From the IMG/VR virus record IMGVR_UViG_3300035703_000008, positions 62,001 to 126,000 of that record: a stretch of DNA of 64,000 nucleotides; one strand, given 5' to 3'. Positions 4,734 through 40,983 of the stretch are shown in pieces; the first letter of the stretch is position 1, and the number at the start of each line of letters is the position of its first letter. A program made the position numbers and the translations under genes. The notes beneath the pieces are model-generated. The model was not told where the DNA came from and did no database searches. It saw only the letters and a program-made list of their open reading frames with translations.

Positions 4734-4750
4734 TCCATCGAGGTACTCTC

Positions 4751-6988: not shown

Positions 6989-7061
6989 GATTTCTTCTCC
7001 TGGCAGTTAAATACATGCCAGCAGCGCCACCATCCCGGTGACGTCGGTTCAACCTCGACGC

Positions 7062-22465: not shown

Positions 22466-22717
22466 TTGATCAAGATACAGTTCCATTCGTTTGGCATGGG
22501 CGATGTCGAGGACCCGGAGCTCTATGCTGCCCATCCCATACGGGAATGGCAGAACACCGAACATGGTCAATGGGTCATGGAACACGGTCGTGACCTCACG
22601 TTCCACACGCAGGTAGACCACAACTCCATGGGCTACCGCGTTTTCATCACAGGATATCTACAAGAAGACATCCATGCCACAGAATATTTCCTAAGATGGC
22701 CCAAGGTAAAATACTAG
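22466..22717 (+). CDS. hypothetical phage protein
   Basis: 83-aa ORF (FGMGDVEDPELYAA...GQWVMEH) between thyX and the epimerase. Confidence 0.65.
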   Translation: MIKIQFHSFGMGDVEDPELYAAHPIREWQNTEHGQWVMEHGRDLTFHTQVDHNSMGYRVFITGYLQEDIHATEYFLRWPKVKY

Positions 22718-23670
22718 TCACCGGTGGACTTGGTTTCATCGGACACAATATAGTAGCACAGCTACAGGCTCTGGGTCATGCAATGGTCATCGTCGATGCT
22801 GTGTCAGACTATGGCATCATACCAAGAGATGAGCTAGAAGGTCTGGTAAGAGAACGAGCACGTCTCATCGATCAGACTGATCTCTATCTCACTGACATCA
22901 CAGATCCCGGCCTGGATCACATCTTCCAAGACCACGACATTGCCACAGTGATCCACTTGGCCAGTTTTCCCCGACAAAAAGTGGTTAATCGAGATCCAGT
23001 GTCGGGCAGTCGCGTCATGAGTGAAGGCCTGCTCAATCTCCTGGAACTCAGTGTTGCCCATCATGTTGATCGATTCGTGTATGTAAGTTCCAGCATGGTC
23101 TATGGTGAATTCACTGATGACACCACCGAAGACCATCCATGTGCTCCACAAGGACAATACGGGATCATGAAGCTGGCTGGAGAATGGCTCACACGCGACT
23201 ACACCCAACGCCGTGGCATGTCGCATGTGATCGTGCGTCCCAGTGCTGTGTACGGAGCCAGAGACGTGGAAGATCGCGTGGTCAGCCAGTTCATGATGGC
23301 TGCACATCGCGGCGAAACTCTACGAGTGCGTGGTGCCGGCGAGTGCCTAGATTTCACTGATGTGAGAGACACTGCACGCGGTATCGTTCTCGCTGCTGTC
23401 ACCCCTGCTGCTGCCAACAACACTTACAATATCACTCGTGGACGCGGTCGTAGCTTGCAGGAAGCCGCAGAGATCGCTGTAAAAATCTCAGGATCGGGCA
23501 CTATCGATGTTCTGGATCGCGATCCTTTGTTCCCCAGTCGGGGTGCATTAAATATAGATCGAGCCCGGAGAGATCTTAGCTTTGAACCCACTATAGACAT
23601 CGAGCAAGGCTTTGAAGACTACTACCGCTGGATTACGGATCCCATTCGCAGGTCTACCTCGTCAGTATAA
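22696..23670 (+). CDS. NAD-dependent nucleotide-sugar epimerase/dehydratase (extended SDR)
   Basis: ILVTGGLGFIG, HLAS, SSSMVYG, catalytic YGIMK (YxxxK), VRPSAVYG. Confidence 0.92.
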   Translation: MAQGKILVTGGLGFIGHNIVAQLQALGHAMVIVDAVSDYGIIPRDELEGLVRERARLIDQTDLYLTDITDPGLDHIFQDHDIATVIHLASFPRQKVVNRDPVSGSRVMSEGLLNLLELSVAHHVDRFVYVSSSMVYGEFTDDTTEDHPCAPQGQYGIMKLAGEWLTRDYTQRRGMSHVIVRPSAVYGARDVEDRVVSQFMMAAHRGETLRVRGAGECLDFTDVRDTARGIVLAAVTPAAANNTYNITRGRGRSLQEAAEIAVKISGSGTIDVLDRDPLFPSRGALNIDRARRDLSFEPTIDIEQGFEDYYRWITDPIRRSTSSV

Positions 23671-24739
23671 TACCCTGAGGTCAGAGATCCTTGACATCAC
23701 TGACCAGGTGTTGAGGTCAGGTCAAGTGATGTCTGGCAACTACACTGCCGAGTTCGAGCATTGGCTGGCACGCAAGAATAGATCAAAATTCGCGATCACG
23801 TGTCATTCTGGAACACAGGCCTTGGAGATCATCGCCGAGTTTTATCGTCAGCACTGGCCCTGCGATCCAGGACACACTCCCACGGTGGTCATGCCCAGCA
23901 TTTCTTATGTGGCCACTGCCAATGCATTTGTTCGAGCTAGATGGGATATAAGATTCGCTGATGTTGATGCCCATGGCATGCTTTCACTCAAGGACGTGCC
24001 CAACGATTCTCTCACACACTGGAATGCCATCTGCTTGGTGGGCTTGTATGGCCAGAGTGTGTATCAGTATTCAGACACACAGTTTTGGAAAAGTGTGCGA
24101 TACAAAAATCAAATCGTGATCGAGGATGGCGCCCAACATTGGCTCAGTGCCGGATCTTCGCGCATAGGGCATGCCACTGCCATAAGTTTTGATCCTACCA
24201 AAAATCTCGGCAACTACGGAAACGGTGGGGCGGTAGTCACCGACGACGAGGATCTAGCTACATTTGCACGAGCTTGGTGCGCGAATGGCAAGCCATATTA
24301 TCGCCAACCGGGCACCAACAGTAGGATGAGCGAAATAGATTGTGCCCAGATGTTGGTAAAAGTCAATCACTTGGACCAATGGCAGGTCCGTCGCCGGCAT
24401 ATCACTGAATACTGGTATAGTCGGCTGGCAGGAAAACGACAGGTGCGTAGTCTTGCAGATCTATCCAACATGGATACCCACTGTTTCCATAAATTTGTGA
24501 TTGATGCTGATCACAGGAATGACCTGCAAAGACATCTAAAAGAACACGGAATAGAAACTCGTGTACACTATGACCAGGCCTTGTTTGAACATGCTGGACT
24601 GAGTCAATTCATCAACCCCGGTGTGCTAAGTTCAGCGGCTTCGTTGTGTCGTCGTGTACTGAGCTTGCCACTCTACCCCGAACTCACGGATCTAGAAGTA
24701 GACTACATCATCGACCAGGTGATAGATTTCTCTTCATAA
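23612..24739 (+). CDS. DegT/DnrJ/EryC1/StrS-family PLP-dependent sugar aminotransferase
   Basis: SGTQAL, VATANA, IEDGAQ, SFDPTKNLGNYGNGG (PLP lysine), GTNSRMSE, VLSLPLYPEL. Confidence 0.93.
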   Translation: MKTTTAGLRIPFAGLPRQYNTLRSEILDITDQVLRSGQVMSGNYTAEFEHWLARKNRSKFAITCHSGTQALEIIAEFYRQHWPCDPGHTPTVVMPSISYVATANAFVRARWDIRFADVDAHGMLSLKDVPNDSLTHWNAICLVGLYGQSVYQYSDTQFWKSVRYKNQIVIEDGAQHWLSAGSSRIGHATAISFDPTKNLGNYGNGGAVVTDDEDLATFARAWCANGKPYYRQPGTNSRMSEIDCAQMLVKVNHLDQWQVRRRHITEYWYSRLAGKRQVRSLADLSNMDTHCFHKFVIDADHRNDLQRHLKEHGIETRVHYDQALFEHAGLSQFINPGVLSSAASLCRRVLSLPLYPELTDLEVDYIIDQVIDFSS

Positions 24740-27700
24740 ATGCATAGCTGGCCAACCAGGCCCACTCGTAGCTTTTCCTGAGCTGTTCAAAATCCCCACC
24801 GACTTCTTCGTAGTAGGCCACGGCATCTTCGGCTCCCCACACTGACCATTCGCCGTAGGGTCCTTCTCCACCAGTGAGCCAGGCACGGAGACGATATTCG
24901 TTTTCTACGTCAGGCAGACTGGCTCGTAGTTTGATCGCTTCGCGGAAGGCCGTGCGCCACGCAGTCCAGGCATCGGTGTTGTAGCGAGCCACACCCGACA
25001 TGATGGGCACTACTTCGTGTGCATCGTCTAGTGTGAAGTCCAAGCCACGACCGGGATTGGCCAACACCAGGTTCTTGTTGTAGGCGATCATGGCCTGGTG
25101 TCCATAGATCAAGCGATTCACAGGATTCCTAGCATGGAAGATGTAGTGCTTGGGCTGTTGCATGCGATCCGGCTGCCATGACCAGTCAAAGTCTGGATTC
25201 ACATCCAACTTGGCAAACACAGCAAAGAACCAAGGCGTTTCACTGGCTCGAGCAGCGGCATGATAAGCAGCAGCACGGCCCGGCACTCGATCCACTCGCA
25301 CCAAGCGGTTGGGTTGGCCTTGTTTGCGCAACATCAGGCTGCCCCAGTTTCGGTCAGCTTGGGGTTCTCCATTGGAGATGTAGACGATGTCCAAGGGCTG
25401 GCCTTTTAGTGTGTCGCGATGGCTGCGATCGATGTGGGGATAATCGTACATCTGTGTTCGAATGTAAGGTACAGCATTCTTGGGCACCACCACTACGCCA
25501 GCACCGGGATCCATGGGAATGATGGTCTTGGTCTTTTCTCTCCAGAGACTCACTGTGGGCATCTTGGCGTTGCCCACATCTCTGTTGGCGAACACGGCCA
25601 AGGGTCCCGAGAACGTGCTCGAGATCACTGTGTCCACATGCGTGTCCTGATCATTGCGGATCACTGGCATGGGCCAACGCGGTACTCTCTGATCTTCGCA
25701 GTAGTTCACGGTCTCAAACCAATCTAGCAGTTCCAGTTCGTTGATCTTGTCTCTCAACGCCCGCACAGGCACATAGAATGTGTCACCGAATTTCTGTTCC
25801 GCACTGGGGAACACGTGCAGCATGTCACGTTGCCAGGCTTCGGGTTGCCACGAGAAATCAAATCTCGAATAGTCGCATACACTGCCCGTCACCCATATGT
25901 GTTCGGCTTCGACGTCGGCGATCAAGCGTTTTAGAGTGTCAAGATAATTATCAAAGTATCTCGCGGTCTTGACCACGCGATAGCGACCCTGCAGGAACTC
26001 AATGGTCTTTGGTGCTTCGGCATTGCCAAAATCTATCACATAGATGTCCGAGGCATCGGCAGGTGCTACCACTTGTTGATCCTGCACAAAATTAAGATTG
26101 GGAAACTCTTCTATGCCCGCAGCCCACTTGGCGTGCCGCTCGAACTCCCAGCGATTGATCAGGAATGTGTCCGACCATTTGTTCCACTGGCTACCAAACA
26201 CGTGAGTCATGAAGCTCTGCCAGGGCTGTGCGTGCCAAGCGAAATCAAAGTCTGAGTAGTCGTTTTCGCTGCCTATGACCCAGAATCTCATGCTCTTGGT
26301 CTTGGTGAGACAGCGTTGTATGGTGTCCATCACAGAATTTACATAACGCACTTTTTGTATGTGAGGATACTGTTCGCGAAGGCGTTCAAACCTCGACGCG
26401 CTCATGGCATTGCTGCGATCCATGTAAAAAATATCCAATACACGCACCACGGATTGAGGCTGTTCTTGGATGATCTGTGGAGGATCGCCGGCAAACTTGA
26501 GATCTTGGGCTCCGGGCACAGTGTAGGTGAGTCCCACTGATGCTTGATATTCTGTACCGAAGTGGTAGATATAAGGCGGCTCTTGTGGGTCGGGTATCCA
26601 TGAATAGTCGATGACATCGGCATCTACTTCTTCGGGCACTGACCATCGCGCGCGATCAGGCAAGATGCGGGCCAGTGGTTCGGTCATGAACTTGCGCTCA
26701 GTGGCACCTGGCACATGATATTCAATGGTGCTCATCTGTGTGGCAGGCCACCACTGGTTGCCAAACACATAGATGTAAGGCGGTGAGCCAGGATCGGGCC
26801 GCCAGGAACGATCAAACTCGAACACATGATCAGTAGTCACTTGCCAACACTGATCGGTGGCAACAAGACGTGCCTGCGGTTCAGACATGAATTTGCGTTC
26901 TGTTGCCCCAGGAACGCGATATTCTACCGTGGGCATGATCTCTGCAGGCCACCACTGATTGCCGAACACATAGATGTAAGCGGGCGATCCAGGATCGGGT
27001 TCCCACGAGTAGTCAAACTCGCAGTCATAATGCGTGACGAACTCGTTGGGTCTGGCTGCGCGTCGTGCTCGCGGTTCCGACATGTACTTGATCTCTGTGG
27101 CTCCAGTCACACGATACTGCAAGGCCGGACGTTGTTCAGGTGTGAGCCATTGGTTACCAAACACATAGACGTAGGCGGGATCTGTGGGATTTGGGCGCCA
27201 CGAATAATCAAACTCTTCGATGTCATCCAACTGCTCCCAGGCCGAGACATCCTGTGCTAGAGTGGCCACCGGTTCTGCCATGTACTTGATCTCAGTGCCA
27301 CCTGTGTTGTATACCACAGTGGGTTCCAGCACAGCAGGGTTCCACTGGTTGCCAAACACATAGGTCATGGGAGGATCAAAGGGATTGGGTTCCCACGAGT
27401 AATCAAAGTCGCTGACAGCGAGATTGTGGCCAAACAACGCAGGCTGCGGCAGTCTGCGTGTGCGTGTGTCCATGTACTTGACTTCGGTGGCACCCGGTAC
27501 CGTATATCGCACACTGGCTTTGTATTCAGCCGGGTTCCACTGGTTGCCCCACACATAGATGTAGGCCGGATCCCGAGGATTGGGTCGCCAGGTCCAGTCC
27601 CAATCCTCTTCGGCTATGGGTTCGAGGATTTCCCAGTGATCGCGCGATTCTGACAACTGCGCTCGCGGTTCATCCACGAACTTTTCTTGAGTCGCTCCAG

Positions 27701-30062
27701 CCACACGATAACGAACAGTGGGCATGACAGTACCAGGATAATGCTGATTACCAAAAACATAGATGTAGGGTTCCTCTGTGGTGTCAGGATGCCAGCTAAA
27801 ATCAAAATCGGTGATAGATTCTAACACCTCCCAGTGATGATCCTGGGAGGCCTTCCTTTGATGCACAATGTCAACAAACTTGCGTTCTTGGGCTCCAGGA
27901 ACCACATAGCAGGCTCCGCCGTTTCTCTGCCACTGGGTGGCAAACTCATAGATGTAGGCAGGGTCGCCCGGATCGGGACACCAGGTATAGTCCACGGTGC
28001 TGTCGTCAATGACATCGGGCGTGACCCAGTTTTCGAGGTTGGGCAGCAGCCTAGGACCTCCGGTCATGTACTTGCGCTCAGTGGCGCCCGGTACACGATA
28101 TTCCAGGGTGGGCATCTTTTCTGCAGGCCAGTGTTGATTGCCCCACACATAGATATAGGCCGGATCTCGGGGGTGTGGTCTCCATGACCAATCAAACGAT
28201 GCATCGTCGATGCTGTGCAATCTGTGCCAATTGATCTGGCTGGCCGACAATGTGGCACGTGGAGACTCGTGGTATTTGCGTTCTTCCGCGCCGGGCATGT
28301 GGAATACGGGTCCACCTTCGTCGTACCATTGCGTGCCGAACTCGTGGGTGTAGAGCGGATCAAGTGGGTTAGGATGCCAGGTGTAGTCAAACCCCACAAT
28401 GTTGTCGGGCACGGACCACAACGACAAGTCCTTGATTGATCTCACCCGGGGAGATTCCAGCAACTTGACCTCTCCGGCTCCGGGTACTGTGTACGTGACG
28501 CCACTGGCTGGTTGATGCTGGCTGGGGAAGTGATAGATGTAGGCAGGTTCTAGGGGATTGGGATGCCAGGTATAATCCACACTATCGGCATTGATCCAAG
28601 CTGGCACCGACCATGGCTCACGATCTCGAGCATGTGCTACTACCTGGAAGGCGTCTACGAGCTTGATCTCTGTGGCCCCAGGTACAGTGTACGTGACACC
28701 ACTCACTGGTTGATGTTGATCTGGGAAGTGGTAGATGTAGGGCGGATCAAGTGGATTGGGATGCCAGGTGTAGTCAACGCCAGTGACTTCAGCAGGTACG
28801 TTCCATGCGGTATGTTCAACCCGAGTGGTCCTGACTTGGAAAGCATCCACCATCTTGATCTCTGTAGCCCCAGGTACTGTATAGGTAACGCCACTAATGG
28901 GTTGGTGTTGATCCGGGAAGTGATAGATGTAGGGCGGATCTAGTGGGTTTGGGTGCCAAGTATAGTCAACATTGTCTACAAATTCAGGCACCGTCCAGTA
29001 TTCGCGATTTTCTTTGATTGCCTTGGCTTGGAAGGCATCCACCATCTTGATCTCTGTAGCCCCAGGTACTGTGTAGGTAACGCCACTTACCGGTTGATGT
29101 TGATCCGGGAAGTGATAGATGTAGGGTGGGTCAAGTGGGTTTGGGTGCCAGGTGTAATCAATACCTACTACTCCATCGGGCACTGACCAGTTTGTGTTGT
29201 CTGTTTTTTTAGTGGTTACTTGGAAAGCATCTGTGAGCTTGATCTCCGTGGCACCAGCGACCGTATAGGTAACGCCACTTACCGGTTGATGTTGATCCGG
29301 GAAGTGATAGATGTAGGGTGGGTCAAGTGGGTTTGGGTGCCAGGTGTAATCAATACCTACTACTCCATCGGGCACTGACCAGTTTGTGTTGTCTGTTTTT
29401 TTAGTGGTTACTTGGAAAGCATCCGTGAGCTTGATCTCTGTGGCACCAGGCACTGTATAGGTAACGCCACTCACTGGCTGGTGTTGATCTGGAAAGTGAT
29501 AGATGTAGGGCGGATCCAGTGGGTTTGGATGCCAGGTGTAGTCGACGCCGGTGATGTGTTGTGGCACCATCCAATTGGTAGGATCAGGTCTGCGTTGTGC
29601 TCGTTGATCGTGTACCAGTTTCGTGCCAGCAGTGCCGGGATACACGGGCCCGCCTGCACTCTGCCACTGTGTACCAAAATGATATTCATAGTCGGGTTCA
29701 GCGAAATCTGGATGCCAAGAGTAATCGAACCCAGTAGTGCCACGTGTGTTGAGCCACACAGACTCGTCGGCACGTCGTGTTATGCGTCGATCCTGATGAT
29801 AGTTGGTGTCAGTGTAGCCTGATTTGGGCACTAGGTATGTGCCTGAGTCTCGCTGCCATTGGCTGGGCCATGCATGACGTTGATGGCTTTGCCAAGGCAC
29901 CGGCTCCCAAAGCCAATCCCACCCTTGATAGTCCGATAAGTAGTTTACGATCCAGAAATATCGAGTGCGACTCAGTTCGCAGGCTTCTTGGATCGATGCT
30001 GCAGATCGTTCATGCGGGAAAAGTCCCGGCTTCTTACCACTGATATAGAAAACATCAAACAT
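24708..30062 (-). CDS. 1784-aa multidomain protein: 17 tandem ~64-aa repeats flanked by glycosyltransferase-like domains
   Basis: Repeat core D(Y/F)xWxPxPxDPxYxYxF(G/P)xQ. The C-terminal domain (LDIVYISNGE...AYHAAA...WRTAFREAIKL) resembles the 46116 protein. Confidence 0.85.
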   Translation of the reverse strand: MFDVFYISGKKPGLFPHERSAASIQEACELSRTRYFWIVNYLSDYQGWDWLWEPVPWQSHQRHAWPSQWQRDSGTYLVPKSGYTDTNYHQDRRITRRADESVWLNTRGTTGFDYSWHPDFAEPDYEYHFGTQWQSAGGPVYPGTAGTKLVHDQRAQRRPDPTNWMVPQHITGVDYTWHPNPLDPPYIYHFPDQHQPVSGVTYTVPGATEIKLTDAFQVTTKKTDNTNWSVPDGVVGIDYTWHPNPLDPPYIYHFPDQHQPVSGVTYTVAGATEIKLTDAFQVTTKKTDNTNWSVPDGVVGIDYTWHPNPLDPPYIYHFPDQHQPVSGVTYTVPGATEIKMVDAFQAKAIKENREYWTVPEFVDNVDYTWHPNPLDPPYIYHFPDQHQPISGVTYTVPGATEIKMVDAFQVRTTRVEHTAWNVPAEVTGVDYTWHPNPLDPPYIYHFPDQHQPVSGVTYTVPGATEIKLVDAFQVVAHARDREPWSVPAWINADSVDYTWHPNPLEPAYIYHFPSQHQPASGVTYTVPGAGEVKLLESPRVRSIKDLSLWSVPDNIVGFDYTWHPNPLDPLYTHEFGTQWYDEGGPVFHMPGAEERKYHESPRATLSASQINWHRLHSIDDASFDWSWRPHPRDPAYIYVWGNQHWPAEKMPTLEYRVPGATERKYMTGGPRLLPNLENWVTPDVIDDSTVDYTWCPDPGDPAYIYEFATQWQRNGGACYVVPGAQERKFVDIVHQRKASQDHHWEVLESITDFDFSWHPDTTEEPYIYVFGNQHYPGTVMPTVRYRVAGATQEKFVDEPRAQLSESRDHWEILEPIAEEDWDWTWRPNPRDPAYIYVWGNQWNPAEYKASVRYTVPGATEVKYMDTRTRRLPQPALFGHNLAVSDFDYSWEPNPFDPPMTYVFGNQWNPAVLEPTVVYNTGGTEIKYMAEPVATLAQDVSAWEQLDDIEEFDYSWRPNPTDPAYVYVFGNQWLTPEQRPALQYRVTGATEIKYMSEPRARRAARPNEFVTHYDCEFDYSWEPDPGSPAYIYVFGNQWWPAEIMPTVEYRVPGATERKFMSEPQARLVATDQCWQVTTDHVFEFDRSWRPDPGSPPYIYVFGNQWWPATQMSTIEYHVPGATERKFMTEPLARILPDRARWSVPEEVDADVIDYSWIPDPQEPPYIYHFGTEYQASVGLTYTVPGAQDLKFAGDPPQIIQEQPQSVVRVLDIFYMDRSNAMSASRFERLREQYPHIQKVRYVNSVMDTIQRCLTKTKSMRFWVIGSENDYSDFDFAWHAQPWQSFMTHVFGSQWNKWSDTFLINRWEFERHAKWAAGIEEFPNLNFVQDQQVVAPADASDIYVIDFGNAEAPKTIEFLQGRYRVVKTARYFDNYLDTLKRLIADVEAEHIWVTGSVCDYSRFDFSWQPEAWQRDMLHVFPSAEQKFGDTFYVPVRALRDKINELELLDWFETVNYCEDQRVPRWPMPVIRNDQDTHVDTVISSTFSGPLAVFANRDVGNAKMPTVSLWREKTKTIIPMDPGAGVVVVPKNAVPYIRTQMYDYPHIDRSHRDTLKGQPLDIVYISNGEPQADRNWGSLMLRKQGQPNRLVRVDRVPGRAAAYHAAARASETPWFFAVFAKLDVNPDFDWSWQPDRMQQPKHYIFHARNPVNRLIYGHQAMIAYNKNLVLANPGRGLDFTLDDAHEVVPIMSGVARYNTDAWTAWRTAFREAIKLRASLPDVENEYRLRAWLTGGEGPYGEWSVWGAEDAVAYYEEVGGDFEQLRKSYEWAWLASYAFMKRNLSPGR
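26520..29740 (-). repeat. in-frame tandem repeat array (~192-nt period, 17 units)
   Basis: 17 occurrences of the repeat core counted in the translation. Units at 29081 and 29273 are identical over roughly 150 nt. Confidence 0.85.
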
Positions 30063-33339: not shown

Positions 33340-34112
33340 CGAGTACCAAACCCGGGGTCTGGATACCGAACACAGTTGGGATTTACGATCTGGAATCCTG
33401 ACAGATCTATTTCCTGTACTCCGGGACGATAATCTTCAATGTCGTTTATTATTGTTTTGGCCAACGCCAGGTTGTTCTCAGCTCCAAAATGATTGTAGCG
33501 GTTTTCGTCTACAGAAATAGCCGATCTGATTTCATCATCGGTACCAGTTCTCTCTCCCACAGAAATCTGCACCAACGGTGTGGTATAGATCACACAGTCA
33601 TCGCCGAGATAATGTTGTATTTGTTGTGTTTCCGTAAAACAATGGAAGTGTATCACAGGAATGCCCGGAAACATCGACGACAATTCTCGAAACCATTGTA
33701 TCATTGCCCATTGGTGGAAATTCCCGTCCCAGAGATGGGTATAATAAAATTTTCTTGCCTTGACTACGTCTGGGTCACTGGGTCTCACTGCTAAATCATC
33801 GTGACGAACCATAAGGTCATTGGTATCGTGACTGATCAACATCCTCCCCCAATCAGTGTGCATACATACCACTGCTTTCAATCTCGATCGATCCTGTGGA
33901 TTTCGATCGAGATGGCTGGTCATATGATGTCGGCTATACCACCAACCTTTGCCAGCAAAACCAAATAGTAACTGATCAGCATCAAAGTGGTCGCAGATCA
34001 GGTCCTGATAAGAGGGGTAGTCCTTGGAATAAAGCTGGTCCTTGTGCCAGCAAGCCCGTCCAGTATTAGAGAAACTGTCTCCAAAAAATAATATAGCCGG
34101 TTTTACGAGCAT
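33336..34112 (-). CDS. SGNH/GDSL-like hydrolase or acyltransferase
   Basis: LFFGDSFS, GFAGKGWW, NHFGAENN. Confidence 0.6.
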   Translation of the reverse strand: MLVKPAILFFGDSFSNTGRACWHKDQLYSKDYPSYQDLICDHFDADQLLFGFAGKGWWYSRHHMTSHLDRNPQDRSRLKAVVCMHTDWGRMLISHDTNDLMVRHDDLAVRPSDPDVVKARKFYYTHLWDGNFHQWAMIQWFRELSSMFPGIPVIHFHCFTETQQIQHYLGDDCVIYTTPLVQISVGERTGTDDEIRSAISVDENRYNHFGAENNLALAKTIINDIEDYRPGVQEIDLSGFQIVNPNCVRYPDPGFGTR

Positions 34113-35584
34113 ACTTTTACACCATACCGCTCCTGGAATCGATCAGCATCTGCACGATCATTGACCATGGGCTCTCCCCGGATATTGAGACTGGTGTTGA
34201 GCAGCATGGGACATCCTGTCAGCAAGAACCAGGCTTCCAATAGCTGTCTGATACCCGATCCATCAGCGGGCACGGTCTGCACTCGGGCTGTGTTGTCTAC
34301 ATGGCATATGGCCGGGAAACTGGCAGGATCTCGAACTCGTGCCACGATCTGCATGTAAGGACTGGAGGTCCACTTGTCAGGCATGTCAAAGTAGTCGTTG
34401 ACATGCTCTTCTAGGATCACTGGAGCAAAGGGACGGAACTTTTGTCTGCGCTTGATCTCATTGACACGATCTTTGATGTCAGGACCGCGTGGGTCAGCCA
34501 AGAGACTGCGATTGCCCAAGGCCCTGGGACCAAACTCAGCGCGACCGCTGGCCACTCCCACGATCTTATTGATCACTAGTTCGTCCAACAGAGGTTTCAC
34601 AGGATAGGCACCGGGTATGAGTCGTCCAAGGAAAGCGTCGCGCCAGTTGAGTTGCTTTCCATAACTGAGAGCCGCAGCACCGAGACTGCTACCAGCATCA
34701 CCGGGATTGGGCATGATCCATATGCGATCAAATACTTCGCCCAGTCTGCGATTGGCTACGCAGTTGAGAGCCACTCCGCCCATGTAAACGAGATTGGGAC
34801 TATTGGTGATGCGTCGAGCATGCTGCATCACGCTCATGATCAAGCGTTCAGTGATGTGCTGTGCGCAGGCTGCCACATGCACGTCTTCCATGTCATAGAC
34901 CACGTTGTCGGGCATGCCGATATGGAAATTGTGTTGTAGCTCGATGCGATCTAGATCAGCCACTACCTTGCGTTCTACAGCCTGATAGTCCTGGTAGCTG
35001 CCCCAGGCAGCCATGCCCATGGTGATGTATTCCTCGTCCATGGGACGGAGACCCACATGTTTGGTCACGGCCGAGTAAAACAATCCGATCGAATGCGGAT
35101 AACCTTGGCGCCACAAACGTAGGTACTGTGCGCGGCCTTGGCTGTCATACCAGGCTTGGTAGATCGAAATAGTGTCCATCTCACCGATGGCATCAATCAC
35201 CACCACGGCCGCGAATTCAAACGGAGATGTCTGGAATCCTGCAGCAGCATGGCTGAGATGGTGGCTGTGTCCTTGTATTCGTGCTGGACGTTGGAGCCAA
35301 TCGCCGAGATGTTTTTTTACTGCGCTCTTGACTGTCCAGGCACCAAACTCTCGTTGACCAGACCATAGTTGCTGGAGATTGTGCATCCACGGACGTTCGT
35401 AGAACGCGATGGTGTCAATGTCATAGTCGCAGCATTCACGCAAGAGATCAGGATGTATCTCTGCATCGTTCTTGCGTTTGCTGTATCTTTCGCTGTGTCC
35501 GGCGAATTCGATGTCACCATCGCTGTTGATCACGCTCACAGCAGCGTCATGGAAACCGGCACTGATTCCTAGATAGTGTTTCAT
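34103..35584 (-). CDS. O-carbamoyltransferase (NodU/CmcH/TobZ family)
   Basis: LGISAGFHDAA, ERYSKRK, HHLSHAA, GGVALNC, GDAG, GRAEFGPRALGNRSLLADP, RPFAP, LLNTSLN. Confidence 0.93.
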   Translation of the reverse strand: MKHYLGISAGFHDAAVSVINSDGDIEFAGHSERYSKRKNDAEIHPDLLRECCDYDIDTIAFYERPWMHNLQQLWSGQREFGAWTVKSAVKKHLGDWLQRPARIQGHSHHLSHAAAGFQTSPFEFAAVVVIDAIGEMDTISIYQAWYDSQGRAQYLRLWRQGYPHSIGLFYSAVTKHVGLRPMDEEYITMGMAAWGSYQDYQAVERKVVADLDRIELQHNFHIGMPDNVVYDMEDVHVAACAQHITERLIMSVMQHARRITNSPNLVYMGGVALNCVANRRLGEVFDRIWIMPNPGDAGSSLGAAALSYGKQLNWRDAFLGRLIPGAYPVKPLLDELVINKIVGVASGRAEFGPRALGNRSLLADPRGPDIKDRVNEIKRRQKFRPFAPVILEEHVNDYFDMPDKWTSSPYMQIVARVRDPASFPAICHVDNTARVQTVPADGSGIRQLLEAWFLLTGCPMLLNTSLNIRGEPMVNDRADADRFQERYGVKVCS

Positions 35585-35704: not shown

Positions 35705-36423
35705 TCAACTGGTGCGGCGCACCAGAGGAGTATACGATCCCGATCGTTGTTTCTGTTCCATGTCGGGATCATAGTAGGGCACAGCCGTAAAAGTCACTGT
35801 GCCTTTTTCGAGATGTCGATCACGACGCACAGCTAACACAGTCTCGAGATTATAGTAATTATACGCAGTATCGATGGGCTGTGTCCATTTCAGGGCTGAT
35901 CCTATGCAGGAACCATGCTGTATGTCATAGTTGGGCTCGACCATGCCGGCAAATTCCTGCCAATCGGTGTTCCAGTCCATGAGATAGGGCAAGATCAGCA
36001 GGCGCCAACCTGGTGCCATGCGAGCGCGCCATGGCCAATGCAGCAATCTAATCGATATCGCCAGGGACTGGTATCTACATTACCGTCGGGCTCGGTCCAT
36101 TGAGCATCTTCGATACGTTCGGCCCAAGGAGTACCGTGCAACATGTCAGGATGCAGTCGACCTCGGCTGAAATAGGTGTCGTAGCCGGTTATGGTTTCAG
36201 GCAAAGGTATGGTATAGCCCAGATGTGCTAGACCACGGAATCCCAAGCAGTGTCGTATGGTCCGATCATCGGACATGTCAATGGGTCGGTAGGCTCGCAG
36301 ATCCTTGAACCACCTCGGCAAATGATTGATCATAGGCGAGGGCGGAGGGCAATCCAGGTACTGTATGTCAGGATCTGTACAGTACTCCCAGGTCAGATAA
36401 TCATTTACTTGTAAATCCATCAT
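35705..36423 (-). pseudogene. hypothetical gene split by a single-base frameshift near 36050 (pseudogene or sequence error)
   Basis: The 5' part (MMDLQVNDY...SPWRYRL, ATGA-coupled start 36423) continues sensibly only in the neighbouring frame (LHWPWRARMAPGWRLLILPY...). Confidence 0.6.
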
Positions 36424-37562
36424 CGTGCGATAATTTTTACTTGTTGTTCTCGATAGTCGGGATCGCTCCAGTGGTAATCGTACTCGCAACGAGCATCGCT
36501 GGTGGTCACTGACCACACATCGAGGTGATTGTCTAACATGGTCCAAATACGGCCGGCATCCGACGTACCAAAGCTACGATCGAGATCTACCTGTCCCACT
36601 TGTGGATGTCCGATAGTGAGACTCTTGTCTTCGGGGTCAAATCCATTGTCGCGAAGCCATCCACGGAAATCATCGAGACGATCTCGCTGCCACGGGAACT
36701 CGCCGGGATCCTTGCCCCACTCAATGTCAAAGTCAGCCGCAGCTTCGGTCTGGCTACGAAGGGTGGTGCTTACCAGTTCGCCGAGTCGGCTGTCGCGTCC
36801 TTCGTCGTTGAACACTTCCCAGTGGTGCTTGCCCACGGCCTTGTTCACGCCCACGAACACTCCGCCCAGGCTGCGATTGATAGTATCAACTCCGAACAGT
36901 TCGTAGTCTTCCTCATCGAGCACAAACCTCGGTGCATGCAACCAGCACATCAGTGTGCTGGGACGTTGCCATTCAGGAGCTTCGATCTCCTTGCGCCAGC
37001 TCAGGGCCCAGGATTCGAACTCGTGACACAAGAGATTCAGTTGTCTGATGTGCCAGCGCGTGGCTGGATCTGCTTTCAAGAAAAACTCGCTCATGGATCC
37101 ACTCACACCTTGAAGGTCTTCAAAGTATCTGTGCAGCCAATTGAATCGATCGTGGATGATATTGCGTCCCACATTGCGACCTGGCTCTGTGGGTTTATCG
37201 GTGATCACTGTCGACATGGTGAAATGATCGTCGATGTGATATCCAATGTTGGCAGCGTTGATGGCAGCGATACTGGCATTGACTTGATCCAGGATGTACC
37301 ATCCGTTGCGCTCGTGGTTAGTGAAACCAAAAAAGCAGTAGTTCTTTTCGAGATGCCGCTGATCGTCGAGAACATTGTTTAGAGCTGCCAGCCATTTGCG
37401 ACTGAGGCTGTTATCATAGACATCCACGTAGGTTTTAAGTAGATCGCCGGTGCGATGATCTCGCAATTCAAGCTCGACTACATCAAGCAGGTATTTTTTT
37501 CCACCAATCATATATTTCCTTGTCATTTTCTTCAAGTATGCGTTCAAGTGTGAAAGTGTCAT
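36420..37562 (-). CDS. hypothetical protein in the radical SAM cluster (start uncertain)
   Basis: 380-aa ORF. The true start is probably near 37490-37525, at the stop of the upstream radical SAM gene. Confidence 0.7.
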   Translation of the reverse strand: MTLSHLNAYLKKMTRKYMIGGKKYLLDVVELELRDHRTGDLLKTYVDVYDNSLSRKWLAALNNVLDDQRHLEKNYCFFGFTNHERNGWYILDQVNASIAAINAANIGYHIDDHFTMSTVITDKPTEPGRNVGRNIIHDRFNWLHRYFEDLQGVSGSMSEFFLKADPATRWHIRQLNLLCHEFESWALSWRKEIEAPEWQRPSTLMCWLHAPRFVLDEEDYELFGVDTINRSLGGVFVGVNKAVGKHHWEVFNDEGRDSRLGELVSTTLRSQTEAAADFDIEWGKDPGEFPWQRDRLDDFRGWLRDNGFDPEDKSLTIGHPQVGQVDLDRSFGTSDAGRIWTMLDNHLDVWSVTTSDARCEYDYHWSDPDYREQQVKIIAR

Positions 37563-38793
37563 TGCGTATATGCTCGAGCTTCAATACACGTTGTTTGCCT
37601 CGAGTCAAGGCTGCTTGCCATTCCCCGGGCCATTGTTGTTCGAATGTGGGACGATTCTTGAGCTGCAGCAAAACATCTTTGAGAGCACCATTGGGCATGC
37701 CCGCGGTAAGTGTGTCTACCCTGGCATCCAATAGCTCACGAGGTAAAGCCAAAGGACTCATGACGATGTCGGGCGTAAAAGAAAATATCACTTTGGCCAG
37801 GATTTCCACGCCCATCTCCTGTGCCAAGGACTGTATGCGATCCACTTCAAACAAGCCCGGCAATGTGAGGGTAAAGTCGATCCTCATTTGCCGCGGATGC
37901 TGCGCGATGTCTCGACCTTGTTGGAAATGCTGTCGCCATTGCTGGTAGTCCAATCCTGTGCGGATGTATTCTCCAATCGCTCCAGTTCCATCCAGACTCG
38001 CGCAGATTTGCCAGTCTCGGATATGCCGGAGTATATCACTATAAAGGTTGACACCACGGTAATCAACCCTACTAAGATTAGTATTATATCTTGCATAGAC
38101 ACGCGGTCCATCTCCCAGTTCTACTATCCGCTGCATGTAGCGCCAGTGTTGTTCGTACATGAGGGGCTCACCACCCACCCAGTAGATCTCCTCCACACGG
38201 TGTTGCTCCACAGCTTCGGCGAATTCTCGCTCGATCTGCTCGTCCTGGAATCTGGTGATCTCTCGTTTGACTTCGGGGCGCATCCAGGTATTCTTGGGAT
38301 TGGCCCAGTCGATCATGTCGTGCTGTCTCTGTTCAGTTTCCCAGGCCGAGCTCAGCATGTCGCCGCAGGTCCTGCACTTGAAGTTGCAGAGATTTGAGAA
38401 TCTATAATCCCAGCTCACGGGCTGCATGCTGGTGCGCCCGTCAGCGTCGGTGGTTGCCCAGATGTCGTCGTACTTGTGCCGGAAAAGATGCCAGAAATAA
38501 GTGCGGTAGACATCAGTATTTAACAAACGATTGTTACAAACGTCGCACTCAGGCAAGGTTTCTCCGGCCATCATCCTACGACGCACTGATCGCATGTGCT
38601 CTGAATTCCAGTGCTGATCCAGGGTCAAAGGAATGTAGCGACCAGTGCCTGCGGCTGTGTCGATGTACTGCTGGAAGTTTTGGGCAGGCTCGCGACTGGC
38701 GCAGCACATCCTGCGTTCGGTCTGTGGACTCAGATAAGTGTGAGTCCACGGTGCCATGCACAGGGTATCGGGTCGTTGATCAGGAGGTAGCAT
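37483..38793 (-). CDS. radical SAM protein with an N-terminal twitch-like cluster
   Basis: CNFKCRTC, VGGEP; N-terminal LCMAPW...MCC...CDVC. Confidence 0.9.
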   Translation of the reverse strand: MLPPDQRPDTLCMAPWTHTYLSPQTERRMCCASREPAQNFQQYIDTAAGTGRYIPLTLDQHWNSEHMRSVRRRMMAGETLPECDVCNNRLLNTDVYRTYFWHLFRHKYDDIWATTDADGRTSMQPVSWDYRFSNLCNFKCRTCGDMLSSAWETEQRQHDMIDWANPKNTWMRPEVKREITRFQDEQIEREFAEAVEQHRVEEIYWVGGEPLMYEQHWRYMQRIVELGDGPRVYARYNTNLSRVDYRGVNLYSDILRHIRDWQICASLDGTGAIGEYIRTGLDYQQWRQHFQQGRDIAQHPRQMRIDFTLTLPGLFEVDRIQSLAQEMGVEILAKVIFSFTPDIVMSPLALPRELLDARVDTLTAGMPNGALKDVLLQLKNRPTFEQQWPGEWQAALTRGKQRVLKLEHIRNDTFTLERILEENDKEIYDWWKKIPA

Positions 38794-39760
38794 ATTCTAG
38801 TACCGGGCGTATTACACGATCAAAGTATCTTCCCATTACAAAATCATGGTTCCAAAAATGTTGTCGATTATGTTCGATCCTGTCCAGGGTCTCCCGATCG
38901 TATCCGCGATCAAGGTCGATTACATCCAAGTTACTCAACATGAGTTTTACACGATCGTACATGTCATTTATTTTATCGTAGCTCTCATCAAATATATTGT
39001 CGAATGTGACAAATCCCAGCGACTTGATATACTCCAAGGTGCCAGGGCAGGCTTGGATCAAAAACGGATGACAATAAGCGATGGGCTTAAAAGTTTTTTC
39101 AGTGATCCATGGACCAGCGCCGATGTAGGTCTCTGATACCACTGAACAAAAGGTCTTGTTATACCAGTCCCACTTTACGTACCTATCATTGAAATAGTGA
39201 AAAAGAGTTTCATGGTCCACGTCCCCAGGTAGAAAGATATTTTCGTCGTTGAAACTCCAGATCATGCGATCCAACCAAGGACCGGCTAGTTCTTTTAACA
39301 TACGCCGATGAAAACGAGTCTTTCGAATCGGCATCAATGCTAATTTTTCAAGTTGAAGGTCCCAGACTCTCAGATTTTCATAATGCTGATTATTCACATA
39401 CTCATTGTACCAAAAATACTCTTGGCATTCTAAAATATACCACCCGTCTTGGACGGCCTCACCGATGTTGTAGTTGAGAGCGATAGAATCGTCGTCGTCG
39501 CGGGGAGCTAGCCACGACGGTATCTCCCAGAGATTATCGAGAATCACCCGGTGACCATTGCTTCTTAGTTCTTTGAGTATGGGAGTCGGGCCATGTATGA
39601 TGCTAGAAATAAAAACTGTGTTTTTTTTATCGTAATGCCGGTTGGCATCATAAATCTCGATATTGAAATACTGCTGCCAGATTTTCCTGTGATGATCAAC
39701 GATCATCGACGGAGCCGGGTACTCCATTTCTCGAAACCAGATCAACTTGGGCTTGGTCAT
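38780..39760 (-). CDS. glycosyltransferase-like protein (TEKTFKP family)
   Basis: SVVSETY...WITEKTFKPIAYCHPF...YIKSLGFVTFDNIFDESYD. AT-rich. Confidence 0.65.
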   Translation of the reverse strand: MTKPKLIWFREMEYPAPSMIVDHHRKIWQQYFNIEIYDANRHYDKKNTVFISSIIHGPTPILKELRSNGHRVILDNLWEIPSWLAPRDDDDSIALNYNIGEAVQDGWYILECQEYFWYNEYVNNQHYENLRVWDLQLEKLALMPIRKTRFHRRMLKELAGPWLDRMIWSFNDENIFLPGDVDHETLFHYFNDRYVKWDWYNKTFCSVVSETYIGAGPWITEKTFKPIAYCHPFLIQACPGTLEYIKSLGFVTFDNIFDESYDKINDMYDRVKLMLSNLDVIDLDRGYDRETLDRIEHNRQHFWNHDFVMGRYFDRVIRPVLEYATS

Positions 39761-40983
39761 CTACTGGGACCCGAGTACTCAATCGCTGCAGCCAATTCAG
39801 GATGATGATCGCAGAGATTTTGTTGGCGCTTCCAGTCAAGGTCTTCTACCTTCATCCTCAAGATGCTGCCATCGAGGCTGACACCACGCTCAATGAATTC
39901 AATCACTCGATCAAATTCAGCACGATGTCTGGCAGTGACCTGTGCCGATTTCAAGCGATCGATCACTGCTGATTTAGCAGCATCAGGCAGGGTGCCCACT
40001 GAAAAGTAGTAGGCTTCGTGCATCATATTCCAATACACAAAGTCGAAACCTTGCTGGTCAATCCAGTTGGCCAATCCTTCGAGATACATAACGTTAAAAA
40101 CATTTATAGTACTACAGACCTGTAGCTGTATGCGGCCAGGATGTCGAGATCTGAGATCCCGGAATCGCTGCAGATTTTCTTGCACCTCAGACCAAACAGC
40201 GTTGGTTCTTTGATATTCAAATCTCTCATCAAGGTCATCGATGCTGAATGCGATCTCTACTGTCTTGAAATGCCGCCAGATCTCTTCGGCTTCCTCAGGC
40301 CACTGAGTGCCGTTGGTGTTGTAGTGTATTTCTACGTTGCCGGCAATGCCACGCTCAACGATGCCACGCAAGAGTTGGAAGTGCTCGCGGATCATGAAAG
40401 GTTCACCACCGGTGAATTCGATGTAGCGGATCTGATCGATGATGGTGTCGATCTGGCTCCAGAACGTTTCGTTTTCCTTGGGCCAGGCACCCTTCTTCAG
40501 CATGGTGTAGTGGAAACTCTTTTTCTTGGTTTCTTCGTCGCGACTCACATATGTGAGCTCTTCCACGGCGAATGTACTGGAACTCCAGGACCCACAAATC
40601 CTGCATTTGAGATTGCAGATGTTGCCCAGCTTGAGATCAAGGAACATGAGAGGTTTGGCATCCACAGTCCACTCTTCGTCGGGGATCATGTGCTTGAGTC
40701 GATCCAAGGTATGCATGCGTTTGCTGGTACGGCCAGCACGTTCTTCGTTCCAGCACTTGCGGCAGGTGCGTGGCTTTTTGGCATCAAGGAACTCTTGGCG
40801 CAGCTGGATCATGTATCGACTCTGCTGTACTTGTCCGAGATCGGCTGTGCTGAGTTCAAACTTTTCTCCGGCATCGTCCACGATCTCTTCTTCGGCCAAG
40901 CAGCAAGGACGTACGGTACCGATCGGTGATGTTTCTAGGCTCACCCATGGTAGTACACAAAATTTGTCGTGTGGTATTTTCAT
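39757..40983 (-). CDS. radical SAM protein with an N-terminal twitch-like cluster
   Basis: CNLKCRIC, TGGEP; FCVLPW...PCC...CRKC. Confidence 0.9.
   Translation of the reverse strand: MKIPHDKFCVLPWVSLETSPIGTVRPCCLAEEEIVDDAGEKFELSTADLGQVQQSRYMIQLRQEFLDAKKPRTCRKCWNEERAGRTSKRMHTLDRLKHMIPDEEWTVDAKPLMFLDLKLGNICNLKCRICGSWSSSTFAVEELTYVSRDEETKKKSFHYTMLKKGAWPKENETFWSQIDTIIDQIRYIEFTGGEPFMIREHFQLLRGIVERGIAGNVEIHYNTNGTQWPEEAEEIWRHFKTVEIAFSIDDLDERFEYQRTNAVWSEVQENLQRFRDLRSRHPGRIQLQVCSTINVFNVMYLEGLANWIDQQGFDFVYWNMMHEAYYFSVGTLPDAAKSAVIDRLKSAQVTARHRAEFDRVIEFIERGVSLDGSILRMKVEDLDWKRQQNLCDHHPELAAAIEYSGPSR

What the first reader, a model, noticed from the sequence alone, without database searches (positions are those of the whole stretch)
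24708..30062. 1784-aa protein with 17 Trp/Pro/Tyr-rich 64-aa repeats between GT-like domains
Seen: an N-terminal domain (FDVFY...YFWIV...WDWLWEP...QRHAW), 17 repeats of D(Y/F)xWxPxPxDPxYxYxFxxQ...VxYxVPGATExK, two further internal domains with the same DFDFxWxP...HVF segment, and a C-terminal domain like the 46116 GT-A protein. The repeat core looks like an amplified sub-element of the GT-like domain itself. Inference: a processive scaffold, glycan-length ruler or multivalent sugar-binding polymerase. I do not recognise the repeat as a named family.
Basis: partly seen in the sequence, partly recalled or inferred. Interest (0 to 1): 0.7.

Follow-up and report, generated by a model that had tools for sequence, protein, structure and literature searches.

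The report
Jumbo-phage glycosyltransferase-like protein with amplified repeats
A 1784-residue protein of an uncultured jumbo phage carries four glycosyltransferase-fold domains and 17 copies of a new 64-residue beta-rich repeat that is an amplified half of its own small domain. It sits in a conserved sugar-modification gene cluster, its repeat number changes quickly between related phages, and its biochemical role is untested.

Summary
Window 24708-30062 (-) is one intact ORF of 1784 aa. It has an N-terminal mini-domain, 17 tandem repeats of 61-68 aa (signature F-D-[FY]-[ST]-W-x-P...Y-I-Y-x-F-G-x-Q...P-G-A-T-E-x-K-Y), two compact internal domains and a larger C-terminal domain.

AlphaFold models (pLDDT 91) and fold searches place all four non-repeat domains in the GT-A / nucleotide-diphospho-sugar-transferase fold. 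The repeats are all-beta and match no known fold or family.

The family is viral and unnamed, with 153 clusters among 1.84 billion representatives. Copy number runs from 7 to 33, with 8, 13, 15 and 17 copies among relatives 71-93% identical. An exact four-repeat (768-nt) deletion is seen in another metagenome.

In 52 IMG/VR loci the gene lies within 10 kb of a carbamoyltransferase (49), an epimerase/dehydratase (42), a DegT aminotransferase (42) and radical SAM enzymes.

One caveat matters. The C-terminal domain has an invariant Ala-Lys-Leu where its standalone paralogues have DxD. Catalysis is therefore either non-canonical or lost.

The ruler, scaffold and lectin ideas remain untested. This is a new variant of a known kind, of moderate interest.

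The parts
24708..30062 (-). Whole ORF, 1784 aa plus stop (P0001)
   Evidence: Full-length homologues share the MFDVFY start and the conserved C-terminal end.
29751..30062 (-). N-terminal mini GT-A-like domain, aa 1-104. A short alpha/beta half (aa 1-46) is followed by a repeat-like half (aa 47-104).
   Evidence: AF2 model pLDDT >90. VIA Z 5-6.9 to GT-A and nucleotidyltransferase chains over residues 1-98. hhalign NT~I1 98.7%, NT~I2 98.9%, NT~REP 95.7%.
26451..29732 (-). Array of 17 tandem WxP repeats, aa 111-1204, all-beta, acidic (net charge -73, pI 4.8). The last unit runs into the first strand of the next domain.
28395..29549 (-). Younger sub-block, repeats 2-7 (aa 172-556), 64-90% identical in DNA. 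The 42-aa cores are nearly identical in protein.
   Evidence: TRF period 192, 4.7 copies. Identity matrix. Among repeats 2-6, core pN/pS 0.08 at pS 0.54 against 0.51 for the linker.
28788..29555 (-). 768 nt (exactly four repeats) absent from a ~94%-identical contig of an unrelated metagenome run
   Evidence: joint 28787>29556 in run X3, 255 nt on the shorter side, depth 15.4
26058..26450 (-). Internal compact GT-A-like domain I1, aa 1205-1335, with few conserved polar residues
   Evidence: Model residues 10-144, VIA Z 9.4. hhalign I1~I2 99.9%, I1~REP 98.4%. Conservation list.
25665..26057 (-). Internal compact GT-A-like domain I2, aa 1336-1466. Conserved C-D-Y (D1397), F-D-F (D1402), H1416 and G-D-T-F.
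   Evidence: Model residues 142-272, VIA Z 9.9-10.2 to MobA-like chains (2e8b, 1e5k); HddC 6jq8 at Z 8.9..
25416..25664 (-). Linker / N-terminal extension of the C-terminal domain, aa 1467-1549
   Evidence: B4GALNT1 and PcManGT alignments begin at model residues 278 and 325
24711..25415 (-). C-terminal full-size GT-A/GT2-like domain with a five-helix tail, aa 1550-1784. It is the best candidate for the functional site. Invariant residues: D1558, E1566, K1618, D1632, Q1635, K1638, N1646, Y-G-H 1653-1655, N1662, D1675, T1677, R1703, R1707, E1708, K1711, R1724.
25206..25214 (-). A1617-K1618-L1619, at the position of the DxD motif of the standalone paralogues. Ala and Lys are invariant in the family.
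46116..47039 (-). 307-aa standalone paralogue of the C-terminal domain, with an I-D-G-D-N DxD motif
22696..24739 (+). NAD-dependent epimerase/dehydratase (22696-23670) and DegT/DnrJ/EryC1 aminotransferase (23612-24739), convergent with the 3' end of the ORF
   Evidence: Found within 10 kb of the homologue in 42 of 52 IMG/VR loci each.
34103..35584 (-). NodU/CmcH-type carbamoyltransferase, the most constant neighbour of the family
   Evidence: 49 of 52 loci. Directly upstream of homologues only 38-39% identical.
37483..46122 (-). Run of radical SAM / SPASM-twitch enzymes and unknown ORFs belonging to the same conserved module

Best explanation
P0001 is the large glycosyltransferase-like component of a conserved sugar-modification module of a clade of uncultured aquatic and subsurface jumbo phages. 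Its C-terminal GT-A/GT2-like domain (aa 1550-1784) is the working site. It most likely binds a modified nucleotide-sugar made by the neighbouring dehydratase/epimerase, aminotransferase, carbamoyltransferase and radical SAM enzymes, and transfers the sugar to an unknown acceptor. It would do this without the usual DxD-bound metal, with the invariant Lys1618 standing in for the cation and Asp1675 a candidate base. The N-terminal mini-domain, the 17 repeats and the two compact domains I1 and I2 are probably non-catalytic derivatives of the same fold. The repeats are an amplified copy of the second, beta-rich half of the compact domain. They probably form an ordered, acidic, elongated stalk whose length changes by in-frame gain and loss of whole units. 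Shown: the architecture, the folds, the origin of the repeat, the copy-number variation and the gene linkage. Inferred: donor binding, metal independence, transfer, the rod shape and the acceptor.
For: Fold: the C-region model has pLDDT 90.9 and pTM 0.81. Foldseek matches K4CP, LH3, Mimivirus R699, ArnC and WrtF at E 1e-5 to 1e-3. VIA Z is 8-10 for each of the three domains, and the top rows are nearly all GT-A or NDP-sugar transferases. BFVD hits other than family members are viral GTs.
Conservation: 16 invariant polar residues lie in the C-terminal domain. About half of them (D1558, E1566, N1646, Y-G, R1703, R1707, E1708, K1711) are shared with DxD-bearing paralogues.
Context: carbamoyltransferase in 49 of 52 loci, epimerase in 42, DegT in 42, radical SAM in about 40. 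Relatives down to 38% identity, in a different gene order, keep carbamoyltransferase, DegT and radical SAM genes beside the homologue and add a UDP-Glc dehydrogenase. A 71%-identical relative keeps the window's own gene order.
No canonical GT2 (PF00535) occurs in the 209 kb held.
Repeat origin: hhalign REP~I1 98.4%, REP~NT 95.7%, I1~I2 99.9%, I1~CT 93%.
Ordered array: the model of aa 1-365 has pLDDT 91.1 and pTM 0.74, with four short main strands (plus two 2-residue bridges) per unit.
Constraint on the repeats: core pN/pS is 0.08 at pS 0.54. D3, W6, P8, Y17, Y31 and K40 are 95-100% conserved over 2213 repeats.
Length variation: 7-33 copies, r = 0.98 with protein length. A 4-unit deletion occurs in a natural relative.
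Against: No sequence-level match to any GT family, Pfam, NCBIfam, PHROG or PDB entry, even with profiles. The link to GTs rests on fold alone, at middling scores.
The DxD motif is absent from the C-terminal domain, which is also what a pseudoenzyme would show.
The same fold is shared by sugar nucleotidyltransferases (MobA, IspD and GDP-mannose pyrophosphorylase are among the best hits for I1 and I2).
No acceptor, donor or activity is known for any family member.
The rod-like shape is inferred from secondary structure and pTM, because model coordinates could not be inspected.
Confidence: 0.45

Rival explanations
1. Pseudo-glycosyltransferase scaffold. All four GT-like domains are catalytically dead. 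The protein is a non-enzymatic adaptor or stalk that binds the glycan or a nucleotide-sugar, or organises the pathway enzymes. The 307-aa DxD-bearing paralogue, or another enzyme, does the chemistry.
For: DxD is replaced by A-K-L in the C-terminal domain, while the standalone paralogues keep (I/V)-D-G-D. I1 has almost no conserved polar residues. Degenerate accessory GT-A domains are known in LH3, which is among the top structural hits (the nature of the LH3 accessory domain is from my own knowledge).
Against: Sixteen invariant polar residues remain in the C-terminal domain, including a Lys exactly at the lost metal site. That pattern fits a changed active site better than a decayed one. The 307-aa paralogue lies within 10 kb in only 9 of 52 loci, and it occurs without the repeat protein in RsoM2USA.
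Confidence: 0.25
2. Virion-associated fibre or decoration protein. The repeat array is a structural shaft exposed on the particle, with length variation driven by host or environmental interaction. The GT-like domains act as glycan-binding or glycan-modifying tips.
For: Copy number turns over fast between close relatives. The repeat cores are constrained at every residue, as expected for an interaction surface. The repeats weakly resemble beads-on-a-string surface repeats such as InlB B-repeat or 'bacterial repeat domain' models (E 8e-3 to 0.4, probability 0.12 or less). Tail-fibre-like genes lie 20 kb away.
Against: The gene is embedded among cytoplasmic biosynthetic enzymes rather than structural genes, and that linkage is conserved. 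There is no PHROG structural match. No trimerisation or attachment domain was recognised. No proteomic data exist.
Confidence: 0.12
3. DNA-modifying glycosyltransferase. The module builds an unusual sugar that is attached to phage DNA bases to evade restriction.
For: Phage GTs commonly glycosylate DNA (reviewed in PMC12619734, which cites Pyle et al. 2024). ThyX lies next to the cluster in this genome.
Against: No ThyA-type dNMP hydroxymethylase is found in the 209 kb held, although the record is only about 60% complete. ThyX is linked in only 8 of 52 loci. The repeat array is strongly acidic (net -73, pI 4.8), which is unsuited to DNA binding.
Confidence: 0.06

Closest known systems
Multi-domain GT-A enzymes with tandem GT-A domains: E. 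coli K4 chondroitin polymerase K4CP (2z86/2z87) and human lysyl hydroxylase LH3 (6fxk)
   Same: Best Foldseek matches of the C-region (E 1.6e-5 to 1e-4). Several GT-A-type domains sit in one chain. In LH3 one of them is a degenerate accessory domain (own knowledge).
   Different: No sequence similarity (7-11% identity over the structural alignments). TM-scores are low for the whole chain. K4CP has a DxD in each domain and this protein has none. Neither K4CP nor LH3 has a repeat array.
Viral GT-A glycosyltransferases: Mimivirus R699 and R655, chlorovirus PBCV-1 A064R domain 1 (2p6w), mycobacteriophage Che8 GT
   Same: Same fold. All are virus-encoded. They sit in virus-encoded pathways that make unusual amino sugars for virion glycans (own knowledge for Mimivirus and PBCV-1; Freeman et al. 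2023 as cited in PMC12619734 for mycobacteriophages).
   Different: No detectable sequence relation. Those enzymes keep canonical metal-binding motifs and have no WxP repeats. The acceptor here is unknown.
The 307-aa standalone family (window 46116-47039; Ralstonia phage RsoM2USA_348 and _350)
   Same: True homologues of the C-terminal domain (E 4e-11; alignment A4), sharing D, E, N, Y-G, R..F-R-E..K and W.
   Different: They keep DxD and lack the WxP loop, the repeats and the compact domains. They are themselves uncharacterised (annotated as hypothetical).
Metal-independent GT-A enzymes such as GT14 core-2 GlcNAc-transferase (own knowledge, not tested here)
   Same: A GT-A fold without DxD, in which basic side chains take over the role of the metal. 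This is the model proposed for the invariant Lys1618.
   Different: No homology was shown. The role of Lys1618 is an inference from alignment position only.
Length-determining spacers in polysaccharide synthesis, e.g. the WbdD coiled-coil ruler of E. coli O9a (own knowledge)
   Same: A catalytic domain is joined to an extended module of variable length.
   Different: The WbdD spacer is a coiled coil acting at a membrane with a polymerase partner. Here the spacer is a beta-repeat array, no membrane anchor is predicted, and no polymer is known.
InlB B-repeat / 'bacterial repeat domain' arrays
   Same: Tandem beta-rich units of about 65-70 aa. They are the only named models that align to the repeat region.
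   Different: Not significant (probability 0.02-0.12, TM 0.11 or less). No Pfam hit. The repeat here is demonstrably derived from a GT-A-like domain.

Membership tests
GT-A fold / nucleotide-diphospho-sugar transferase superfamily | Alpha/beta/alpha Rossmann-like fold with the characteristic mixed central sheet | tested here: met
   AF2 pLDDT 91. Foldseek PDB E 1.6e-5 and below with probability 0.9-0.99. VIA Z 8-10 for I1, I2 and the C-terminal domain and 5-7 for the N-terminal domain, with the top rows nearly all from this superfamily.
GT-A fold / nucleotide-diphospho-sugar transferase superfamily | DxD (or variant) metal-binding motif at the end of the fourth strand | tested here: not met
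   The C-terminal domain has an invariant A-K-L where the paralogues have (I/V)-D-G-D. The compact domains and the N-terminal domain have a single Asp there (C-D-Y, N-D-Y or S-D-Y).
GT-A fold / nucleotide-diphospho-sugar transferase superfamily | Sequence membership in a curated GT family (Pfam, NCBIfam, CAZy-type models) | tested here: not met
   No Pfam, NCBIfam or PHROG hit for the protein or for 31 aligned members. No PDB sequence hit with a profile.
GT-A fold / nucleotide-diphospho-sugar transferase superfamily | Binding of a nucleotide-sugar and glycosyl transfer | not testable with these tools
   Needs biochemistry.
Processive membrane GT2 synthases (BcsA, hyaluronan and chitin synthases) | Transmembrane channel plus D, DxD, (T)ED and QxxRW motifs | tested here: not met
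   The fold aligns at Z 8.8-9.3 over 170-212 residues. However, the maximum 19-residue hydropathy is 0.96, so there is no membrane segment. DxD is absent. The conserved W-R-T-A-F-R-E helix is not a QxxRW match by sequence, and its structural equivalence could not be checked.
Bifunctional tandem GT-A polymerases (K4CP, heparosan and chondroitin synthases) | Two catalytically complete GT-A domains, each with DxD | tested here: not met
   Structural hit only. I1 and I2 are about 130-aa compact versions, and no domain has DxD.
Any named repeat family (Pfam repeats; InlB B-repeat/Flg_new) | Significant profile or fold match of the 64-aa unit | tested here: not met
   Pfam: none. PDB Foldseek best E is 0.55, on the N-terminal domain only. 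VIA: no repeat-region hit in the top 50. AFDB 'bacterial repeat' models have probability 0.12 or less. The repeat profile finds only this family among 1.84e9 representatives.

The most novel reading that the evidence does not exclude
The repeat array is a length-tunable rigid spacer, in effect a molecular ruler or reach-extender, built by amplifying half of an enzyme domain. It sets how far the C-terminal metal-independent transferase acts from the N-terminal cap. Gain or loss of repeats would then retune the size or placement of a phage-made glycan on the virion or host envelope. This would be a new way for phages to diversify a surface glycan without changing the enzymes.
Probability: 0.12. 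Interest if true: 0.8.

Novelty: new variant of a known kind. Interest (0 to 1): 0.55.

Why it matters
There are three reasons.

1. It defines an unnamed, purely viral protein family and a new repeat domain. The repeat has a traceable origin, which is unusual: it is the beta-rich second half of a compact GT-A-like domain, amplified up to about 33 times.

2. It marks a conserved gene module in uncultured jumbo phages from lakes, groundwater, peat and the sea. The module comprises a dehydratase/epimerase, an aminotransferase, a carbamoyltransferase, several radical SAM enzymes and GT-like proteins. It probably makes and installs an elaborate amino sugar. The product and its target are unknown and could bear on host recognition or on evasion of defence.

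3. The invariant Lys at the lost DxD site gives a sharp, testable hypothesis about metal-independent GT-A chemistry.

If the protein is only a decayed scaffold, interest falls to that of an odd structural repeat.

Tried and rejected
- Pfam, PHROGs and NCBIfam on the protein and on the aligned family found nothing usable. The only hits were chance ones (BLTP1_N, LAG1-DNAbind, iSirtuin) far below their cut-offs.
- PDB sequence searches with the single protein and with a profile found nothing.
- tblastn against 50,697 GenBank phages found only Ralstonia phage RsoM2USA, matching the C-terminal domain alone, in proteins annotated as hypothetical.
- Megablast of the neighbourhood against phages gave no match.
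- Cluster look-up of ten NCBI-sourced homologues returned only 'hypothetical protein'.
- The atlas feature search returned only unnamed viral clusters.
- Literature searches found no description of this family. PMC12619734 describes another aquatic jumbo-phage lineage with GT genes but does not mention these repeats.
- Complex prediction of the C-region with the 307-aa DxD paralogue returned 'no answer' (score 0.01). This is no evidence either way.
- The promoter and terminator scan gave no more sites than chance.
- The genome search on the homologue's contig failed because the record is not held.
- The idea that the repeats bind DNA was rejected because of the array's net charge of -73.
- The idea that the near-identity of repeats 2-6 is merely recent duplication or gene conversion was rejected, because synonymous divergence among them is high (pS 0.54) while the cores stay identical. 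Only repeats 2 and 3 are truly recent (90% DNA identity).

Full report
**What is there**

The window belongs to an IMG/VR virus record of 208,932 bases, estimated at about 60% complete. The record carries tRNAs, a tmRNA and a tail-fibre-like ORF of more than 3,783 aa, so it is a jumbo phage. Its probable source is a subsurface metagenome, and relatives occur in peat and other metagenomes.

Window 24708-30062 on the minus strand is a single intact ORF of 1784 aa. It has no hydrophobic segment: the maximum 19-residue hydropathy is 0.96.

- The motif D[YF]xWxPxP recurs 17 times between aa 113 and 1152, at spacings of 61-68 residues.
- Tandem Repeats Finder sees the youngest part as a 192-nt period.
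- A profile built from the 17 units (alignment A3) scores each unit at 1e-26 to 1e-33.
- In a six-frame search of the whole 209-kb record, that profile hits nothing outside this ORF.
- There are two unit subtypes: a short one (HFPDQHQP-SGVTYTV or FGTQW..GGP) and a long one with a three-residue insert (VFGNQWWPAE.MPTVEYRV).
- The array is rich in Pro, Tyr and Trp and is strongly acidic, with net charge -73 and pI 4.8.

**Domain structure**

Two AlphaFold2 models were built on alignments of natural homologues. Both are confident:
- aa 1195-1784: pLDDT 90.9, pTM 0.81
- aa 1-365: pLDDT 91.1, pTM 0.74

The C-terminal region contains:
- two compact alpha/beta domains of about 130 aa, I1 (aa 1205-1335) and I2 (aa 1336-1466)
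- a linker
- a full-size domain with a five-helix tail (aa 1550-1784)

Foldseek against the PDB gives chondroitin polymerase K4CP, lysyl hydroxylase LH3, Mimivirus R699, ArnC, WrtF and other GT-A enzymes at E 1.6e-5 to 1e-3.

An independent exhaustive alignment (VIA) gives Z 8-10 separately for I1, I2 and the C-terminal domain. The first 50 rows are nearly all GT-A glycosyltransferases or sugar nucleotidyltransferases of the same superfold.

The N-terminal 98 residues give the same list at Z 5-6.9. BFVD returns two family members annotated 'uncharacterized, uncultured Caudovirales phage', followed by viral glycosyltransferases.

These scores are middling and show the fold, not the function. 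They are nevertheless consistent across four domains and three search methods.

**The repeats and where they came from**

Each unit is modelled with four short main beta-strands (plus two 2-residue bridges), at high confidence. The region matches nothing significant in the PDB by Foldseek or VIA. It has only a faint resemblance to InlB-type 'bacterial repeat' models in AFDB, at probability 0.12 or less. Pfam and PHROGs have no model for it.

The repeat profile also picks up one weaker site in each flanking domain, always just after the strand that would carry DxD: aa 47-104, 1271-1295, 1401-1424 and 1624-1642.

Profile-profile comparison settles the relationship:

| Pair | hhalign probability | Note |
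|---|---|---|
| I1 ~ I2 | 99.9% | |
| N-domain ~ I1 | 98.7% | |
| N-domain ~ I2 | 98.9% | |
| I1 ~ C-domain | 93% | nucleotide-binding half |
| Repeat ~ I1 | 98.4% | I1 positions 68-132 |
| Repeat ~ N-domain | 95.7% | |

The compact domain is therefore an alpha/beta half followed by a repeat-like half, and the array is 17 further copies of that second half.

**The family**

More than 948 metagenomic proteins of 1147-2988 aa share the architecture: an N-terminal cap, repeats, and a conserved C-region of about 590 aa that is 44-95% identical. None has a name.

The repeat profile, searched against 1.84 billion cluster representatives, finds only 153 clusters. Nearly all those listed show the same domains, as whole proteins or fragments (one, P0381, matched none of the domain profiles), with the shortest complete-looking members at about 480 aa.

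Among 107 full-length homologues the copy number is 7-33, with a median of 21, and correlates with protein length at r = 0.98. Relatives 71-93% identical have 8, 13, 15 and 17 copies; the 8-copy one, 71% identical, keeps the window's gene order.

A contig from a different study, about 94% identical, lacks window 28788-29555. That is exactly 768 nt, or four units.

Repeats 2-7 form a younger block with 64-90% DNA identity. The other repeats share 28-63% protein identity.

Within repeats 2-6 of that block, the 42-residue core is almost identical in protein although synonymous sites have diverged (pS 0.54, pN/pS 0.08). The 22-residue linker is much freer (pN/pS 0.51). The cores are therefore under strong purifying selection at essentially every residue.

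Over 2213 repeats of the family, D3, W6, P8, Y17, Y31 and K40 are 95-100% conserved.

**Context**

In the window the ORF is flanked by:
- ThyX, an NAD-dependent epimerase/dehydratase and a DegT aminotransferase on one side
- on the other side, several unknown ORFs, a carbamoyltransferase, five radical SAM / SPASM-twitch enzymes and a 307-aa paralogue of the C-terminal domain

In 52 IMG/VR loci with at least 19 kb around the homologue, the following lie within 10 kb:

| Neighbour | Loci out of 52 |
|---|---|
| Carbamoyltransferase | 49 |
| Epimerase/dehydratase | 42 |
| DegT aminotransferase | 42 |
| Radical SAM paralogues | about 40 |

Relatives only 38-39% identical, with a different gene order, still keep the carbamoyltransferase directly upstream. 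They also carry DegT, a B12-radical SAM enzyme and a UDP-glucose dehydrogenase. Even a 476-aa short form sits next to a UDP-glucose dehydrogenase-family gene.

No canonical GT2 is present in the 209 kb held.

**The catalytic question**

The C-terminal domain aligns with the 307-aa protein (E 4e-11) and with two RsoM2USA proteins. Those standalone proteins carry (I/V)-D-G-D-(N/T) at the DxD position. Every member of the repeat-protein family has Ala-Lys-Leu there (A1617-K1618-L1619), with Ala and Lys invariant.

Many other polar residues stay invariant: D1558, E1566, D1632, Q1635, K1638, N1646, Y-G-H 1653-1655, N1662, D1675, T1677, R1703, R1707, E1708, K1711 and R1724. About half of them are shared with the DxD paralogues.

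I read this as a remodelled site rather than a decayed one. A Lys replacing the metal is known in metal-independent GT-A enzymes (my own knowledge, not tested here). The pseudoenzyme reading cannot be excluded.

I1 has almost no conserved polar residues. I2 keeps C-D-Y, F-D-F, His and G-D-T-F.

**Most likely mechanism and rivals**

| Explanation | Confidence |
|---|---|
| Glycosyltransferase-like enzyme of a phage sugar pathway. The C-terminal domain binds and probably transfers a modified sugar without a DxD metal. The repeats form an ordered acidic stalk of adjustable length. | 0.45 |
| Fully non-catalytic scaffold or glycan binder | 0.25 |
| Virion fibre or decoration protein | 0.12 |
| DNA-glycosylating enzyme | 0.06 |

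The DNA-glycosylation reading is disfavoured for three reasons. The array is acidic. No ThyA-type hydroxymethylase is found in the held sequence. ThyX is linked in only 8 of 52 loci.

Nothing here tests them. A processive membrane synthase is unlikely, because there is no membrane segment and the motif set is absent.

**Comparison and novelty**

It works like a multi-domain GT-A protein with degenerate accessory domains, as in LH3 and K4CP. By the usual criteria it is not a member of any curated GT family: the fold criterion is met, the DxD criterion is not met, and there is no family-level sequence match.

The repeat is a new domain family of traceable origin. I rate the finding as a new variant of a known kind, with interest 0.55.

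**Limits**

- Model coordinates could not be inspected, so the rod shape and the pocket geometry are inferences.
- The copy number in the youngest block depends on a short-read assembly, and contigs of the probable source run break there.
- The complex prediction with the 307-aa paralogue gave no answer.

Noticed in passing
window 46116-47039 (-): The 307-aa DxD-bearing GT-A-like paralogue is very widespread and very conserved. All 8000 scored candidates were hits, and the top 120 clusters are 77-97% identical. It has no Pfam, NCBIfam or PHROG model. Ralstonia phage RsoM2USA carries two copies (RsoM2USA_348 and _350). It is an abundant, unnamed phage enzyme family in its own right.
   Followed up: partly
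window 37483-46122 (-): Five tandem radical SAM paralogues have the SPASM/twitch domain at the N-terminus, ahead of the radical SAM core. One matches NF033640 N_Twi_rSAM at 4e-90. They are interleaved with unknown ORFs and co-conserved with the repeat protein in about 40 of 52 loci.
   Followed up: partly
window 52632-63998 (-) and 50273-51808 (-): An ORF of more than 3,783 aa runs off the window. It has FG-GAP repeats and weak T7-tail-fibre-N and DUF2460 signals. Beside it is a 511-aa protein with a Peptidase_G2 intramolecular-chaperone cleavage domain. These are probable tail-fibre or host-recognition genes, adjacent to the sugar island.
   Followed up: no
window 168-7014 (+): Five tRNA genes (Arg-tct, Gly-gcc, Ser-gct, Val-tac, Thr-tgt) and a tmRNA with tag peptide ANDEVFALAA. 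The tag may hint at the host lineage.
   Followed up: no
window 28788-29555; run X3 contig: A relative about 94% identical, from an unrelated study, has an in-frame deletion of exactly four repeats (768 nt). In the probable source run, the contigs break within 28872-29394 and word depth rises two- to four-fold, as expected for near-identical repeats.
   Followed up: yes
window 30061-33339 (+), 33336-34112 (-), 36420-37562 (-): Several ORFs next to the repeat protein have no family match. The 370-, 386- and 380-aa ones are co-conserved with it (35, 31 and 38 of 52 loci). The 370-aa protein has only a weak atlas lead to GT10 fucosyltransferases (score 0.79). Its listed start codon overlaps the start of the repeat-protein gene on the other strand, and in relative L015 the two genes are 35 nt apart.
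   Followed up: partly
loci (L006; contig of P0015): Distant relatives, on contigs of 240-358 kb, carry the repeat protein near porin-like, PstS-like phosphate-binding, AhpC and MoxR-AAA/DUF2201 genes. This suggests aquatic phages with many auxiliary host-like genes.
   Followed up: no
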